From Heptranchias perlo (taxonomy: Eukaryota), in NCBI RefSeq assembly GCF_035084215.1, contig NC_090336.1, positions 28,954,001-29,018,000 of the forward strand: 64,000 bases of DNA. The letters run 5' to 3'. Of this stretch, positions 27,765 through 63,293 are shown in pieces; within the stretch, counting starts at the first letter, position 1, and every line of letters begins with the position of its first letter. Below the pieces are notes generated by a model. The model was not told the DNA's origin, ran no database searches, and worked only from the letters and a program-made list of their open reading frames with translations. The position numbers were made by a program, and so were the translations under genes.

Positions 27765-28975
27765 GAGTGGAAACAGGACAGACAGCCACTCAAGCCTGTT
27801 TCATCATTCAATTAGATCCTGGCTGATCTGGATCTTAACTCCATTTACCCACCTTGGTTCCATATCCCTTAATACCCTTGCCTATCAAAAATCTATCAAT
27901 CTCGGTTTTCAAATTTTCAATTGATTTAGTCTCAACAGCTTTTTGGGGGAGAGAGTTCCAGATTTTCACTACCCTTTGTGTGAAGACGTGCTTCCTGACC
28001 ACCCCTCAATGGCCTAGCTCTAATTTTAAGGCCCCCTTGTTCTGAATTCTACCACCAGAGGAAATAGTTTCTCTCTATCTACGCTATTAGTCCTTTAATC
28101 ACCTTAAACACGCATGCAGCAAGACCTAGACAACATCCAGGCTTGGGCTGATAAGTGGCAAGTAACATTCGCACCAGACAAGTGCCAGGCAATGATCATC
28201 TCCAACAAAAGAGAGAGTCTAACCACCTCCCCTTGACATTCAACTGCATTACCATCGCCGAATCCCCCACCATCAACATCCTGGGAGTCACCATTGACCA
28301 GAAACTTAACTGGACCAGCCATATAAATACTGTGGCTATGAGAGCAGGTCAGAGGCTGGGTATTCTGCGGCGAGTGACTCACCTCCTGACTCCCCAAAGC
28401 CTTTCCACCATCTACAAGGCACAAGTCAGGAGTGTGATGGAATATTCTCCACTTGCTTGGATGAGTGCAGCTCCAACAACACTCAAGAAGCTCAACACCA
28501 TCCAGGACAAAGCAGCCCGCTTGATTGGCAGCCCATCCACCACCCTAAACATTCACTCCCTTCACCACCAGCGCACTGTGGCTGCAGTGTGTACCATCCA
28601 CAGGATGCACTGCAGCAACTCGCCAAGGCTTCTTCGACAGCACCTCCCAAACCCGCGACCTCTACCACCTAGAAGGACAAGAGCAGCAGGTGCATGGGAA
28701 CAACACCACCTGCACGTTCCCCTCCAAGTCACACACCATCCTGACTTGGAAATATATCGTCGTTCCTTCATCGTTGCTGGGTCAAAATCCTGGAACTCCC
28801 TTCCTAACAGCACTGTGGGAGAACCTTCACCACACGGACTGCAGCGGTTCAAGAAGGCGGCTCACCACCACCTTCTCAAGGGCAATTAGGGATGGGCAAT
28901 AAATGCCGGCCTCGCCAGCAACGCCCACATCCCATGAACGAATAAAAAAAACCTCAATCAGATCACCCACTAATC
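27765..28975 (-). mobile_element. CR1 3' fragment interrupted by the LINE at 28111-28951
   Basis: Similar to 22740-23110; the host sequence ccttaaacac|ctcaatcagatcaccc is split by the insert. Confidence 0.7.
28111..28951 (+). mobile_element. L2/CR1-group LINE (second family), 3' fragment with complete tail
   Basis: ORF 28155..28889 (DQKLNWTSHIN...YKAQVRSVMEY...HLLKGN*), then AATAAA and an A tail. Confidence 0.9.
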
Positions 28976-30565
28976 CAATTACATCACCAGTTAAGAAAGA
29001 TTTTTGTAGCCATTGGAAGTCTGTTTTAGATTGTTCCAGACCATTGTAAATTTTGAAGAGAAATTAATCTCGTCAAGTGAATAATTTGCTCTGTTTTTAT
29101 TTTTAATCTCCCTTTGAAGGACATTGTTTGCGCGGGGGTGGAGGCAGGGTTGTGGGATCCTTGCCTGCAGTTTGGCAAGTAGTTGGAGTGTGGCGGGGTA
29201 ATTGTAACAAACATTGAGCACTCAATCACAGTGTAGGTATCAGGTGCGCTGGTATTCTTTGTAACCCAAGGCAACTGAGATATCCAAACCGAGGAGCGTT
29301 CGACTGAACAGTTGGGACATTTGTGGCGACAGTCGTTCATTGGCAAACTGAGCGCTGTATATTCATAGCATCCCTCATCCTCAGTTCCAAATAGCGCCCT
29401 AGTTGGTTGTTGTGATCGCTGTCTGTAGTGGTGCACAGTTGCAGCTACTTGGGAGTGTGGAGCAGATAAAAATCAAGTGGGAATGTTGGGTTGTTGCAAC
29501 TGTCAAAGAAACAAATTAAATCTAATTTTTGATTGGCTTGTTGACTTGACCGGTAAGTATTTGTGGCGCAGATTTCCGCGGGATTGAGTGGAGTAGTCCC
29601 AAAATATATCGGATGGGGAAAGATTGGAGCCCACCTTCCCAGCGAATCTACCGCCATATAGCTTTCTTCCCTGAGTAGAACTTAATCTGTTGCTTTTAAT
29701 ATAATTGTATGTTATGAATTCTCTCTGCTGGAGGTGAATAGCTCAAAGTGTTCACCACCGCTGGTTGTGCGGAGTGATCAGATGACTAAAATATGAATGG
29801 TCGCGATTTGGCAATAGAACTGGGCAACGGTGGAATTTGGTAGCACGTTGCAAAATGAGCCAAAATGATTGAATATATTGATGCTGAGCTACCTCTGGGT
29901 TTTAGCTTTGGATTTTTCAATATGGGTCTTTAAATTTCTTAGCCACCTATTACTATTGGAGAGGACAGGGTAATCATTTTTCCCCACACCATTGATTTAA
30001 ATACATTCAATTGACTGAATTTTCTTCACCCAGAGAAAGATAACTTTCTTCAGATCTTTTGATCATCTTGCGTGATTTTGGTGGTGAGTTGCCGATTCTT
30101 TATCCGCAGCGTCTTTTTCTTTTTCTCCAGGAAATTTAGACCACCTGTTGTCAGTGCAGGAAACTATTTTTCCACCCGATAGTTTACATTGCATCACTTC
30201 CAAGCGTTGGCATCCATAATGTCAAATAAACTCCGGTTCCTCAAGCAAGTATTAAATGGACTACAGGGAAACCCTAGGAAACGGCCATGTAAACGTGGTT
30301 GAATGAGGTTTGCGACTAAAACCGTTGCACCGTATGTTATTCACCGTTTAAATTTGCAGTTAAACCAAGAATTAGAATGGCATTTAGGCCTTATAAATGT
30401 GTCCTTGGTCCCAACACTCTGTTTTGTGCTCTAATGGAACGCGCTGTTGGGGGAGTGCCCATTCGCCCTGCTCAACTACATTTGGTATTAGAGCACCTGT
30501 TACAGCCAAGCAATGCCCCATTTGTTCCCGTTAGTGCTGTAGTTGAGTCGGGTAGATCTGGGTCA

Positions 30566-30772
30566 AAAGCAAAATATTGCGGATGCTAGAAATCTGAAAT
30601 ACAGAAAATTCTGGAGAAACTCAGCAAGTCAGGCAGCATCTGTGGAGAAAGAAAGTGATGTGGAGATGCCGGTGATGGACTGGGGTTGACAATTGTAAAC
30701 AATTTTACAACACCAAGTTATAGTCCAGAAAGAAAGAGTTAACGTTTCAGGACGACGACCTTCAGTCAGATC
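30566..30772 (-). mobile_element. Penelope pLTR-like short element carrying a nested 71-bp Penelope end (30656-30726)
   Basis: Left end is the reverse complement of 39496-39526. Degenerate hammerhead-like core on - (CTGACTGAAGG...TGAAACGTT). Insert flanked by AGAAAGAAAG duplication. Confidence 0.65.
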
Positions 30773-32230
30773 GTTTCGTTAGATCTGGTGGGATAGTTTT
30801 ATATGTCACCTGTCTATGCGCACATTCAAGTGCTAACTGGCAGCACTAAATTTCAAGACAAAAATAGTCCTCCTGAAAGCCTGCTGCAACCTTAAATTAT
30901 TGAAGTTCTGCTGCTCGTATAACCCACTTTTACATTTCAACGTTAGCCCCACTGCTAAGTGGTTTCTATTTCACAGGGAGCCAAAAGTTGCAGTACAAAT
31001 CGGAATCAGCGGAACCTCCTGACTCCAGAAAAAAGCCCTATGGGAGGCGGTCTTCTCATACCGTTCGTGCATGGACTATCACTTCAATCCTGTCAAACAG
31101 GATTTAAAGAGCGCTGAGGCATTTCTTTCATAAGCTGGAGTTCATTTAAATTGCCGTCCACTCCTCCAAACATTTACATTTTATTTGCCGGGTAGGAAGC
31201 TTCGCGCCTGTTTGTAAACATACAGGCGCAGAACTCTTTCCTAGGCAGGAAAATTGTACTTAAAAGCCCACAGTACAGACATAGTTGGCAGAGCCCGGAC
31301 AGTCCACATCATGTCTATTTACATAATAATGTAACCAACTACCGCATTACTAATCCCTCTGCTGGAACTCGCTCCGAAACAGCGAGGTTCAAAATATCAA
31401 AGGGAGGTGCGGCTGCCCCCTCGGACCCTGAACAACTTGTCCTGCCATTCAAACCCGGTGAACTGCACTGGGGCAGGAGATGGTCCGGCTACAGCTCGTC
31501 CCCTTGGCTACTCGACACCGCCTTGAGCCCCCGCCTGCTCAAGTGGAATTGCGGCATCTCTCCACCAATTCCCGCCCGTCCTTAAGCAGCAGGCTGCGTT
31601 CAACACTAATTATAGTTGAAACATGTTAACAAAAAGTATCCAATTCAAATGACAGATAGGAGGGAACGCTTCTCTTTTTCGACTACCGTGGATCAGAAAT
31701 TAAATTTAATGCACAGGTCAAGCTGTGTATGGGAGAGCAGAGAGGCGACCGCAAACACCACAATATATGTTTATAAACACCCGAGTGAGGTGGGGAGGCG
31801 GCGGTGACTGGGGGACCCGCTCTCCCGCAGGGAGCCCACCCTCCGCAATATCGACTGCACTGAGCCGGGCTGCGAGTCCCCGAGGCGGGTTATTTTATTC
31901 CCAGTCACTCGATGTCCCCACCCCCCTCCTCCTTCATCACCCCCTCCTCCTCCATCCTGCTCCTGCATCACCCCCCTCCTCCTCCTCCTCCTGCATCACC
32001 CCCCTCCTCCTCCTCCAGCACCCCCCCTCCTCCATCATCAGCCGCTCCTATCCGGTTACTGTCATGATTGGCGGCGCCAGCCGGGCTCCTGGAAGCAGCG
32101 ATGTTCCTCCTCCTCCTCCTCCCACACTCCCTCCTCCTCCTCCTCCCACTCTCCCTCCTCCTCCTCCTCCCACTCTCCCTCCTCCCCGGGGCAGCCGAAG
32201 CGCAGAGCGTTCTCCGAGAGCCGGGCGAAG

Positions 32231-61996: not shown

Positions 61997-62266
61997 CTGT
62001 GAAAACATGCAAAGGCAAAATGTTCATAAATACTATAATCAAACTTTAAAAAAGATTTTTTTTTTAAAATGGGGTCAAAAAGTTTTTCAATAACTGCTCA
62101 AGTTCAATATTTAAAGTTCCAAAAATGGTATAACATATCTACAAATTTGCACTGAACACATGCAATAAATGCTACTTTCTTCAATTAAAATGTTCAGTGC
62201 TGTATTATATATATTTTATCAGAAATGATGAACAAAGTCTGCATTTCAAAACATATTTAAACTCAC

Positions 62267-62578
62267 CTTTGAGGGGCAGTTGAATACATCTTTTGAATAC
62301 ATCACTTTTGGAATTCTCTTCATACTGAAAGATTAATTCTCTTTCAAAGTCTTCAGCAGTCACTAAAAACATCAGACAACTGTCTATACTGTAAGTGTTT
62401 TCAGGGGTAAGCACAGGACCTGAATTTGTCACTCCATCTTTAACGCGATCAGATCCTTTGTACCACTCAACAGTAACATTTTTATGGAGAAGATCGTACA
62501 CTGAATGGGACACAGATAAGGGCTCGCCATACACAGGGTTCTTTGGCTCCATTTTGAATTCTGAAAATTTAGGCGAGC
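62267..62578 (-). CDS. Divergent Ig C1-like domain exon
   Basis: 312 bp, phase 1-1, ttatag acceptor and gtgagt donor; VTVEWYKG and TYSIDS; canonical cysteines absent. Confidence 0.8.
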
Positions 62579-62650
62579 CTATAACATAGAAAATAATATA
62601 TTTAATGGATACAAAAAGGCAAGATTAAGCCACATCCTATCTGCCAAGAA

Positions 62651-63293
62651 TTTTTTTAATTCATTCTCTGGATATGGGCGTCGCTGACATGGCCTGCATG
62701 TATTGCATATCTCTAGTCACCCTTGAGATGGTGGTGAACCGCTACTGTCCACAGCATGAAGGTACTCCCAACAAAGCTGTTAGGTAGGGAATTCCAGGAT
62801 TTTGGCCCAGCTACAATGAAGGAATGGCAATACATGTCCAAGTGACTTGGAGGTGATAGTATTCCCACGCACCTGCTGCCTATGTCCTTCTAGGTGGCGG
62901 AGGTCACGTGCTGCCGAACTTGCTGCAGTGCTTCCTGTACATAGTACACAATGCAGCCACAGTACGCCGGTGGTGGAGGGTGTGACTGTTTATGCTGGAT
63001 AGGGTGCCGCCAGCAGACTGCTTTGTCCTGGTTAGTGTTGAGATTCTTGAGTGTACTTGCAACTGTACCCATCCAGGTGAGTGGAGAGTATTCAATCACA
63101 CTCCTGACTTGTAGGTGGTGGAGAGGCTTTGGGGAGTCAGGTGAGCCGCTCACCATAGAATACCCAGCTTCTGACCAGCTCCAGTAGCCATGACACTTGA
63201 GAGTTTCTGGTCAATGGTGACCCCCAGGATATTGATGGTGGGGGATTTAGCGATGGTGATGTCATTGAATGTCAAGATGAGGTGGTTAGATTT
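62651..63293 (-). mobile_element. Second-family LINE, older 3' fragment with tail, in an intron
   Basis: QVRSVIEYSPLTWM and HTLHHRRTVAA; reverse-complement tail at the left end. Confidence 0.85.

What the first reader, a model, noticed from the sequence alone, without database searches (positions are those of the whole stretch)
28111..63293. Sense-strand avoidance of TTTT (Pol III terminator) in all four copies of that LINE family
Seen by manual scan: no run of four T on the sense strand in 45547-48059, 28111-28951, 60489-61605 or 62660-63293. The only TTTT (46281-84) lies in an inverted insert. A4+ runs are common on the same strand, and neighbouring CR1s have many sense-strand T4-T6 runs (e.g. 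49242-47). Established: vertebrate Pol III terminates at T4 or longer. Inference: about 3 kb of unique coding sequence has been purged of terminators, which independently supports Pol III transcription.
Basis: partly seen in the sequence, partly recalled or inferred. Interest (0 to 1): 0.8.

Follow-up and report, generated by a model that had tools for sequence, protein, structure and literature searches.

The report
T-run-poor sense strand of shark LINE
Four decayed copies of a shark retrotransposon that starts with a tRNA-like promoter do lack TTTT on their coding strand, but that zero is close to what their T-poor make-up predicts; a wider, T-specific shortage of T-clusters gives only moderate support for transcription by RNA polymerase III.

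Summary
The counts are right. The sense strands of 45547-48059, 28111-28951, 60489-61605(-) and 62660-63293(-) hold one TTTT (46281-84). It lies in an inverted insert that contigs from other copies skip.

The zero is weak evidence. The non-redundant 3.0 kb is 21% T and 2% Phe, with C-ending codons. Dinucleotide and codon-preserving shuffles expect only 2.5-2.8 T4+ runs, and 4-6% of shuffles have none. Ordinary LINE ORFs and a host gene in this window also fall below that null (0.63-0.73 of expected). After calibrating on them, P is about 0.18.

A broader test is stronger. Published Pol III stop signals (T4+, T3VT, TVT3) number 1 against 6-7 expected (P 0.003 raw, 0.03-0.045 calibrated). A, C and G clusters sit at expectation.

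The full-length form starts with the partner SINE's tRNA-derived head. I therefore read the T-cluster shortage as probable (about 45%) selection for Pol III read-through. This is not shown. "Purged of terminators" overstates what the TTTT count proves.

The scan has noted this family many times on other DNA of the same genome. One earlier follow-up reached the same verdict on TTTT. No RNA starts or full-length copies could be obtained here.

The parts
45547..45634 (+). tRNA-derived head of copy A, with A box at 45548 and B box at 45613
   Evidence: ARAGORN calls a tRNA-like gene at 45541-45634. The A box TAGTATAGTGG matches 10/11 and the B box AGTTCAAATCT matches 9/11. Loose ends of about 500-650 contigs per DNA run stop at 45547 with a shared ...GGGGTACG before it, so copy A lacks about 8 nt of the head.
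45547..45870 (+). Head plus body shared with the partner SINE (30% T, no T4+)
   Evidence: 78% identity to the SINE at 18897-18598. After 45870/71 the SINE-type contigs go on into the LINE tail sequence (table 7). Composition.
45871..45940 (+). LINE-specific A-rich leader; the 394-nt leader holds 8 upstream ATGs
   Evidence: The bin 45845-45933 is covered by many contigs, and one contig bridges 45748-45921.
45941..48057 (+). Remnant of the single EN-RT ORF of copy A, with frameshifts, stops, a roughly 200-nt RT deletion at about 47450 and truncation at the 3' end
   Evidence: Stop-free frames and translations. Pfam RVT_1 on 47428-47724 and 47836-48084. 84% identical to a Heptranchias perlo protein.
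46233..46411 (+). Private inverted insert holding the only sense-strand TTTT (46281-46284)
   Evidence: Reverse complement of 46739-46914 at 94.9%. Contigs of other copies skip 46232->46412 (table 5).
48059..48219 (.). 161-bp palindrome at the truncated 3' end of copy A, before the host CR1 resumes
   Evidence: Self-BLAST 48059-48219 against 48219-48059 at 95.7%; sequence.
28111..28951 (+). Copy B: 3' third of the ORF (stop at 28887-28889), 3' UTR and A8 tail; no T4+
   Evidence: 93.4% identical to copy C.
60489..61605 (-). Copy C: RT part with a 293-codon open stretch; no sense T4+
   Evidence: (RVT_1, E 1.5e-24).
62651..63293 (-). Copy D: old, diverged 3' fragment (72-74% identical to B and C); no sense T4+
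18498..18905 (-). Partner SINE copy (head and body, short linker, last ~110 nt of the LINE); this decayed copy has T4 and T5 runs
143..2572 (-). Comparator LINE X1: intact 809-aa EN-RT ORF with 7 sense T4+
   Evidence: Pfam; counts and shuffles.
37966..39069 (+). Comparator LINE X2 (RT ORF) with 4 sense T4+
48220..51336 (+). Comparator LINE X3: the CR1-like host of copy A (5' part at 44843-45546) with 8 sense T4+

Best explanation
Shown. The four stretches are decayed copies of one very abundant shark LINE family. It is about 3.3 kb long, has a single EN-RT ORF of about 940 codons and no ORF1. Its full-length form begins with the tRNA-derived head and body of its partner SINE and ends in the tail that the SINE shares. 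The sense strand has no TTTT apart from one in a private insert.

That zero is mostly arithmetic. With 21% T, few Phe and TTN codons and C-ending codons, only about 2.5-2.8 TTTT are expected in 3 kb.

Also shown. T-clusters are scarcer than the codons themselves predict. Runs of T3 or longer, and the interrupted-T4 signals that stop Pol III in vitro, number 1 against 6-7 expected. Codon junctions that would make T3 or longer number 3 against 11, while junctions that make only TT are at the expected level. A, C and G clusters are at the expected level.

Inferred. Pol III starts at the A and B boxes of the head, as it does on the SINE. It must reach the 3' tail, which the family's reverse transcriptase recognises. 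Lineages that acquire T4+ or strong T-clusters make tail-less RNA and leave no copies, so the master lineage stays T-run-poor. Dead copies, like the SINE copy at 18.5 kb, are free to gain T4 and T5 runs. Protein could come from the same RNA or, in trans, from other transcripts.
For: - Counts and the private insert.
- tRNA-like head with A and B boxes.
- The head-to-leader junction and the leader are multi-copy in at least two species. Among the listed, best-supported loose ends (8,188 further ones are not shown) there is no cluster marking a headless 5' end.
- Composite Pol III stop signals: 1 observed against 6.2-7.0 expected, P 0.002-0.003. The one hit (TATTT at 47966) is a private change of copy A.
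- Specific to T: composite counts for A, C and G are 24 vs 25-26, 22 vs 23-25 and 17 vs 13.5-16.
- Specific to run length: T|T junctions giving T2 are 14 vs 15-16; those giving T3 or longer are 3 vs 11, P 0.001.
- Predicted read-through is about 0.37 (about 0.6 without the private TATTT), against a median of 0.002 in shuffles and 1e-7 to 1e-11 in comparator LINEs.
- Termination efficiencies come from PMC5725217 (T4 75%, T5 95%) and PMC3141230 (T3VT, TVT3 and T2VT2 are weak terminators; isolated T3 is inactive).
- The SINE-shared part is 30% T yet free of T4+.
Against: - TTTT alone is not significant after calibration: P 0.18-0.19.
- Comparator ORFs also run below the codon null: T4+ at 0.63-0.73 of expected, composite at 0.83-0.85. 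The calibrated composite P is only 0.026-0.045, from three LINEs and one gene.
- I chose the composite statistic after seeing the T3 shortage.
- Isolated T3 is not a terminator, so its shortage is not required by the model.
- Three TTCTT motifs remain (about 15% termination each in vitro).
- All four copies descend from one ancestral sequence, so this is effectively one draw.
- About 200 nt of RT is unseen.
- There is no RNA evidence. All runs were contigs, so no starts, strand or level could be read.
- Translation of uncapped Pol III RNA is normally poor (my own knowledge). The leader has 8 upstream ATGs.
Confidence: 0.45

Rival explanations
1. Composition and chance. The family is simply T-poor and C-rich, for reasons of lineage history, amino-acid content and codon-pair habits shared in weaker form by other ORFs. 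With about 2.5 TTTT expected, none occurred. The tRNA head is a captured 5' UTR (5'-end switching), and the replicative RNA is made by Pol II.
For: - P0 is 0.04-0.056 uncalibrated and 0.18-0.19 calibrated.
- Per-copy zeros are expected in 8-74% of shuffles.
- C-ending codons are preferred over T-ending ones throughout: ATC 29/ATT 15, GTC 20/GTT 9, TCC 17/TCT 8, TTC 14/TTT 4.
- Comparators also lack T-runs relative to the null; X2's junction T3+ count is 10 against 15-18.
- An earlier follow-up on another copy reached the same view (s1-882573).
- 5' switching of LINEs is known (bioRxiv 10.1101/2022.11.04.512097).
Against: - The shortage is specific to T and to runs of three or more, at P 0.001-0.003 against codon-preserving nulls, while A, C and G clusters are normal.
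- The family's ratio (0.14-0.27) is well below every comparator (0.56-0.95).
- Even the 16%-T Kir6.2-like host ORF has 2 T4+ runs in 402 codons.
- A Pol II start at exactly the SINE's first nucleotide would need its own explanation.
Confidence: 0.38
2. Selection against U-runs for another reason. For example, the element may avoid AU-rich or U-rich destabilising elements, polymerase or reverse-transcriptase pausing or slippage on U or A tracts, or U-tract-binding host factors, whichever polymerase makes the RNA.
For: The depletion begins at T3, which is not a Pol III terminator when isolated (PMC3141230). T|A junctions are also low, 36 against 55 expected.
Against: The neighbouring LINE families show no comparable depletion. 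I know of no such constraint for LINEs. The signals missing are exactly the ones that stop Pol III.
Confidence: 0.1
3. The head-LINE junction in copy A is an accident: a SINE inserted beside a LINE, or a one-off template-switch chimera. On this reading the Pol III frame is irrelevant and the T-run pattern is incidental.
For: Copy A is rearranged, with an inverted insert, an RT deletion and a palindromic 3' end. Template-switch chimeras of small RNAs with LINEs are known (bioRxiv 10.1101/2025.02.02.635956).
Against: The LINE-specific leader next to the head is multi-copy in two species. A contig from another copy bridges 45748-45921. No cluster marking a headless 5' end appears among the listed loose ends. 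Many other about 3.3-kb headed copies were noted elsewhere in this genome (unchecked notes).
Confidence: 0.03

Closest known systems
HE1 V-SINE / HER1 LINE pair of sharks and rays (Ogiwara et al. 1999, 2002, as listed in PMC3747384 Table 1)
   Same: Cartilaginous-fish host. A tRNA-derived SINE with a conserved body shares its 3' tail with a partner LINE.
   Different: In the papers I could read, the published pair is described as sharing only the 3' tail. Here the LINE also carries the SINE's head and body at its 5' end. Identity with HE1/HER1 could not be tested because no reference sequences were available.
SINEs built as tRNA head + LINE 5' UTR + LINE 3' UTR (Bov-tA, SINE2_Gav, AfroSINE and others; Kojima 2018, PMC5786205)
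   Same: The SINE equals the 5' end plus the 3' end of its LINE. The model proposes that template switching adds a small-RNA head.
   Different: In those cases the head sits on the SINE only, and the LINE is taken to be Pol II-transcribed. Kojima notes that Pol II and Pol III signals may conflict. Here the head is on the autonomous element too.
5'-end switching of LINEs (L1 5' UTR replacement; SolRTE in Nicotiana, bioRxiv 10.1101/2022.11.04.512097)
   Same: A conserved ORF and 3' end are combined with an acquired, unrelated 5' region that supplies the promoter.
   Different: The known acquired 5' ends are Pol II promoters. A type-2 Pol III promoter as the acquired 5' end was not found in my searches.
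Small-RNA/LINE chimeric retrocopies (U6-L1, tRNA-L1; bioRxiv 10.1101/2025.02.02.635956)
   Same: A Pol III-type RNA is fused 5' of LINE sequence by RT template switching.
   Different: Those are single dead-end insertions, mostly on 5'-truncated L1, and the tRNA parts are often antisense halves. Here the fusion is the propagating full-length unit of a very abundant family.
Canonical Pol III transcription units (tRNA genes, SINEs)
   Same: Internal A and B boxes; no T4+ between start and end; T4+ soon after the element in flanking DNA.
   Different: The length is about 3.3 kb with a 2.8-kb ORF, against less than 0.5 kb for known units. Transcription by Pol III is not shown.

Membership tests
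tRNA-derived (type 2 Pol III promoter) SINE head | tRNA-like fold at the 5' end | tested here: met
   ARAGORN calls tRNA-Thr(agt)-like at 45541-45634. Rfam at gathering threshold found nothing, as expected for a degenerate SINE head.
tRNA-derived (type 2 Pol III promoter) SINE head | A box (TRGCNNAGTGG) and B box (GGTTCRANNCC) at tRNA-like spacing | tested here: met
   A box at 45548 matches 10/11. B box at 45613 matches 9/11, about 54 nt downstream. This is a decayed copy, so the master sequence may match better.
tRNA-derived (type 2 Pol III promoter) SINE head | Actual initiation by Pol III | not testable with these tools
   Only Logan contigs were available, so no read starts could be seen.
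Autonomous non-LTR retrotransposon (LINE) | Reverse transcriptase domain | tested here: met
   Pfam RVT_1 with E 1.5e-24 on copy C, 3.1e-10 on copy A (47428-47724) and 3.8e-06 (27.2 bits, below the 29.6-bit curated cut-off) on copy A (47836-48084).
Autonomous non-LTR retrotransposon (LINE) | Apurinic-type endonuclease domain upstream of RT | tested here: inconclusive
   The short broken pieces 45998-46249 and 46648-47211 gave no Pfam hit. By eye the translation reads like an EN domain (DIAILTES..., GDFNAH..., SDHR).
Autonomous non-LTR retrotransposon (LINE) | 5'-truncated copies ending in a common 3' tail that the partner SINE shares | tested here: met
   Copies B and D end in the same tail plus an A-run. 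The SINE at 18498-18573 matches B 732-808 at 86%.
HER1 LINE / HE1 V-SINE | Sequence identity to the published elements | not testable with these tools
   No reference sequence was available in any tool. Only the host group and the architecture fit.
Pol III transcription unit | No T4+ on the sense strand between start and 3' end | tested here: met
   0 in the 3.0-kb non-redundant sequence; the single TTTT is in a private insert. About 200 nt of RT was not seen.
Pol III transcription unit | Depletion of stop signals beyond what composition gives | tested here: inconclusive
   T4+ alone: P 0.04-0.056 raw, 0.18-0.19 calibrated. Composite signals: P 0.002-0.003 raw, 0.026-0.045 calibrated.

The most novel reading that the evidence does not exclude
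An autonomous LINE of sharks whose replicative, protein-coding 3.3-kb RNA is made by RNA polymerase III from a tRNA-type internal promoter shared with its SINE. Its whole ORF would be kept free of Pol III stop signals by selection, making it in effect a protein-coding SINE.
Probability: 0.4. Interest if true: 0.85.

Novelty: new variant of a known kind. Interest (0 to 1): 0.55.

Why it matters
LINEs are taken to be Pol II elements and SINEs to be their Pol III parasites. A LINE that uses the SINE's own Pol III promoter, with an ORF shaped to let Pol III through, would blur that division. It would offer a route for how SINEs arise, by internal deletion of a headed LINE. It would also be a natural case of a kilobase-long, translated Pol III transcript.

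The present finding does not establish this. It shows that the necessary condition holds (no T4+), and that a T-specific shortage of clusters exists and is moderately unlikely by chance. That makes the idea directly testable.

Tried and rejected
No DNA from outside the window could be read.
- Two exact-pattern scans of metagenome contigs with RT 26-mer and 20-mer patterns shared by two copies found nothing.
- Read laying returned contigs only, so RNA starts, strand and level could not be seen. Only 40 of 226 majority differences were listed, so the majority sequence could not be fully checked for TTTT.
- Rfam at gathering threshold gave nothing.
- Pfam gave no EN hit on the broken pieces.
- Literature searches for a tRNA-headed or Pol III-transcribed LINE gave nothing relevant. 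Ogiwara 2002 (PMC155270) is not held.
- I rejected the idea that the SINE head is an independent neighbouring insertion (see rival 4).
- I rejected general homopolymer avoidance, because A, C and G clusters are normal.
- I rejected a Phe-specific codon choice. TTC:TTT at 14:4 is in line with the general 2:1 preference for C-ending codons.
The non-redundant sequence was only concatenated by coordinates inside scripts, for counting.

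
Full report
**1. Observation**

I recounted homopolymer runs on the stated intervals.
- On the sense strand, copy A (45547-48059, +) has one T4 at 46281-46284.
- Copies B (28111-28951, +), C (60489-61605, -) and D (62660-63293, -) have none.
- Sense-strand A4+ runs number 15, 3, 3 and 1.

The single TTTT lies in 46235-46409, the reverse complement of 46739-46914 at 94.9% identity. When public contigs were laid on the stretch, 34, 25, 6 and 7 contigs in four runs joined 46232 directly to 46412. 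The insert is therefore private to this copy.

The assembly gap at 33619-33894 lies between the end of a Kir6.2-like ORF and a GGA-rich tandem repeat. It is 4.7 kb from copy B and 11.6 kb from copy A and touches none of the copies. Continuity across it does not matter for this finding. ORFs listed across it are artefacts of the N letters.

**2. What the family is**

The best protein relative is an uncharacterised protein of the shark Heptranchias perlo, 84% identical. Pfam finds RVT_1 on copies A and C.

Copy A starts with a tRNA-like head:
- ARAGORN calls 45541-45634.
- The A box at 45548 matches 10/11 and the B box at 45613 matches 9/11.

A body follows the head. Head and body together (45547-45870) match the SINE copy at 18897-18598 at 78%. 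Next comes a 70-nt A-rich leader specific to the LINE, then an ATG at 45941 and a broken EN-RT reading frame.

Copy B supplies the end of the ORF (stop at 28887-28889), a 3' UTR of about 55 nt and an A8 tail. The SINE's 3' end matches that tail at 86%. Pieced together, the unit is about 3.3 kb with one ORF of about 940 codons and no ORF1.

Copy A is rearranged. It has the inverted insert, an RT deletion of about 200 nt at about 47450, truncation at 48057 followed by a 161-bp palindrome, and it is nested in a CR1-like element.

**3. Evidence from public runs**

- The stretch's 31-mers are held at 42-68% by DNA runs of at least eight coded organisms, so the family is widespread and very abundant.
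- About 500-650 contigs per DNA run break at 45547. The letters just before the break share ...GGGGTACG, and further upstream the sequence is random. Copy A therefore lacks about 8 nt of the true 5' end.
- After 45870/71 one class of contigs runs into the LINE tail sequence. This is the SINE form.
- The LINE-specific leader bin is also covered by many contigs. One contig from another copy bridges 45748-45921.
- No cluster of 'before' loose ends marks a headless LINE 5' end among the listed clusters, although clusters of about 85 contigs were listed elsewhere. 8,188 further loose ends are not shown.
- I conclude that the head belongs to the full-length LINE in at least two species.
- Where most contigs differ from copy A, the change is mostly T>C (34) or A>G (26), which is the mark of CpG decay in copy A. 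Only 11 changes are to T. None of the listed ones creates TTTT, but 186 rows were not shown.
- All runs were contigs. They say nothing about RNA starts, strand or level.

**4. Is zero TTTT more than chance?**

Per copy it is not. Dinucleotide shuffles give zero in 8% (A), 44% (B), 32% (C) and 74% (D) of trials.

For the non-redundant 3.0 kb (A without the insert, plus B's tail):

| Null | Expected T4+ | P of zero |
|---|---|---|
| Mononucleotide shuffle | 4.65 | 0.004 |
| Dinucleotide shuffle | 2.73 | 0.055 |
| Synonymous-codon shuffle | 2.69 | 0.040 |
| Codon-order shuffle | 2.53 | 0.055 |

The large contrast with the CR1 neighbours (2.6-3.6 T4+ per kb) is mainly composition:

| Feature | This family | Comparators |
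|---|---|---|
| T content | 0.21 | 0.23-0.27 |
| Phe codons | 2.1% | 3.8-4.9% |
| TTN codons | 3.4% | 8-11% |

C-ending codons are preferred over T-ending ones about 2:1 throughout the family's ORF.

The codon null also overshoots for ordinary ORFs. Three comparator LINE ORFs and the Kir6.2-like host ORF together have 18 T4+ against 24.6-28.5 expected. Conditioned on that ratio, the family's zero has P = 0.18-0.19.

So TTTT alone adds little. An earlier follow-up on another copy of this genome (s1-882573) reached the same view. I reached it here independently.

**5. A wider test**

Termination data:
- In human cells T4 terminates about 75% and T5 about 95% of Pol III transcripts; T1-T3 are read through (PMC5725217).
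- In vitro, T3VT, TVT3, T3VT2, T2VT3 and some T2VT2 motifs are weak terminators, for example TCT3 at about 50%. Isolated T3 is inactive (PMC3141230).

Counts in the family ORF:
- T4+ plus T3VT plus TVT3 gives 1 hit against 6.2-7.0 expected under both codon nulls (P 0.002-0.003).
- The one hit, TATTT at 47966, is a private change of copy A. B and C read AACATTC there.
- Four T2VT2 motifs remain (three TTCTT, one TTGTT), which matches expectation.

The shortage is specific to T. The same statistic for A, C and G gives 24 vs 25-26, 22 vs 23-25 and 17 vs 13.5-16.

It is also specific to run length. T|T codon junctions that make only TT are at expectation (14 vs 15-16). Those that would make T3 or longer number 3 against 11 (P 0.001).

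A crude predicted read-through uses the published efficiencies plus my own guesses for untested motifs. It gives 0.37 for the family, or about 0.6 without the private TATTT. Shuffles have a median of 0.002 (P 0.002-0.003), and the comparator LINEs give 1e-7 to 1e-11.

Caveats:
- Comparators are also somewhat below the null (composite 45 vs 53-54; junction T3+ ratios 0.56-0.86). The calibrated P is 0.026-0.045.
- I chose the composite after noticing the T3 shortage.
- All copies descend from one ancestral sequence, so this is one draw.

**6. Mechanism and rivals**

The structure makes it likely that Pol III initiates at LINE-linked heads as it does on the SINE. With no T4+, it could run to the 3' tail. 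An RNA that ends in that tail should be usable by the family's RT just as SINE RNA is, so protein need not come from the same molecule. Lineages that gain strong T-clusters would make tail-less RNA and die out. That would explain a T-specific, run-length-specific shortage on the sense strand only. It would also explain why a dead SINE copy here has gained T4 and T5 runs. I give this reading 0.45.

- The main rival (0.38) is lineage composition plus chance, with the head being no more than a captured 5' UTR. Promoter capture by 5' switching is known in LINEs.
- A smaller rival (0.10) is selection against U-runs for another reason.
- An accidental junction in copy A (0.03) is contradicted.
- Problems for the Pol III reading are translation of uncapped RNA (my own knowledge), the 8 upstream ATGs in the leader and the absence of any RNA data.

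**7. Comparison with known systems**

- The host group and the SINE/LINE tail sharing fit the elasmobranch HE1 V-SINE / HER1 pair (PMC3747384). Sequence identity could not be tested.
- SINEs made of a tRNA head plus a LINE 5' UTR plus a LINE 3' UTR are well described (PMC5786205). There the LINE itself lacks the head and is taken as Pol II-driven.
- Small-RNA/L1 chimeras are dead-end insertions.
- I found no paper describing a tRNA-headed autonomous LINE or T-run avoidance in one. The library is incomplete.
- Within this scan the same family has been flagged many times on other DNA of the genome. Those are unchecked notes.

**8. Verdict and limits**

Its statistical weight as stated (TTTT only) is small. 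A principled extension gives moderate support for real T-run avoidance. The Pol III interpretation is plausible and testable but not shown.

Limits:
- Metagenome scans were blank.
- Only contigs could be laid, and about 200 nt of RT was unseen.

Noticed in passing
window 32389-33597 (+), gap 33619-33894, repeat 33895-34140+: An intronless Kir6.2-like ORF (402 aa, ...[14 protein letters not shown]...) ends in an acidic run just before the assembly gap. Beyond the gap lies a GGA/GAG-rich tandem repeat with a roughly 30-nt unit (GGAGGAGGAGGAGAGCCCGGG). ORFs listed across the gap are artefacts of the N letters.
   Followed up: partly
window 61700-62000 (-) and 62270-62570 (-): Two exon-like stretches between LINE copies C and D encode immunoglobulin C1-set-like sequence (...EYTCEVRHTKTNDVVEKTFTLNI). 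They are flanked by splice-like sites, so a host Ig-superfamily gene carries the LINE fragments in its introns.
   Followed up: no
window 48059-48219: A 161-bp near-perfect palindrome (95.7%) sits at the truncated 3' end of copy A. Its right arm runs on into the host CR1. A 3'-truncated LINE copy cannot arise by ordinary target-primed reverse transcription, which suggests a hairpin or repair-mediated rearrangement.
   Followed up: partly
window 143-2572 (-): An intact 809-aa EN+RT ORF of a different, C-poor, CR1-like LINE (Exo_endo_phos + RVT_1). It is possibly a young copy and runs towards the window start.
   Followed up: partly
window 9564-10256 (+): An ORF with a DDE_Tnp_4 (PIF/Harbinger-type) transposase domain, E 7e-35.
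   Followed up: no
window 45547-45940: The 394-nt leader of the headed LINE contains 8 ATG triplets upstream of the ORF start at 45941. Cap-dependent scanning to the ORF would be inefficient whichever polymerase makes the RNA.
   Followed up: no
window 18498-18905 (-): The partner SINE copy joins head and body to the LINE's last ~110 nt through a short linker (TCAAATCACTACCAA-like). The same linker appears as the consensus of loose ends after 45871 in other species' contigs, so the SINE is more than a plain head-to-tail deletion of the LINE.
   Followed up: partly
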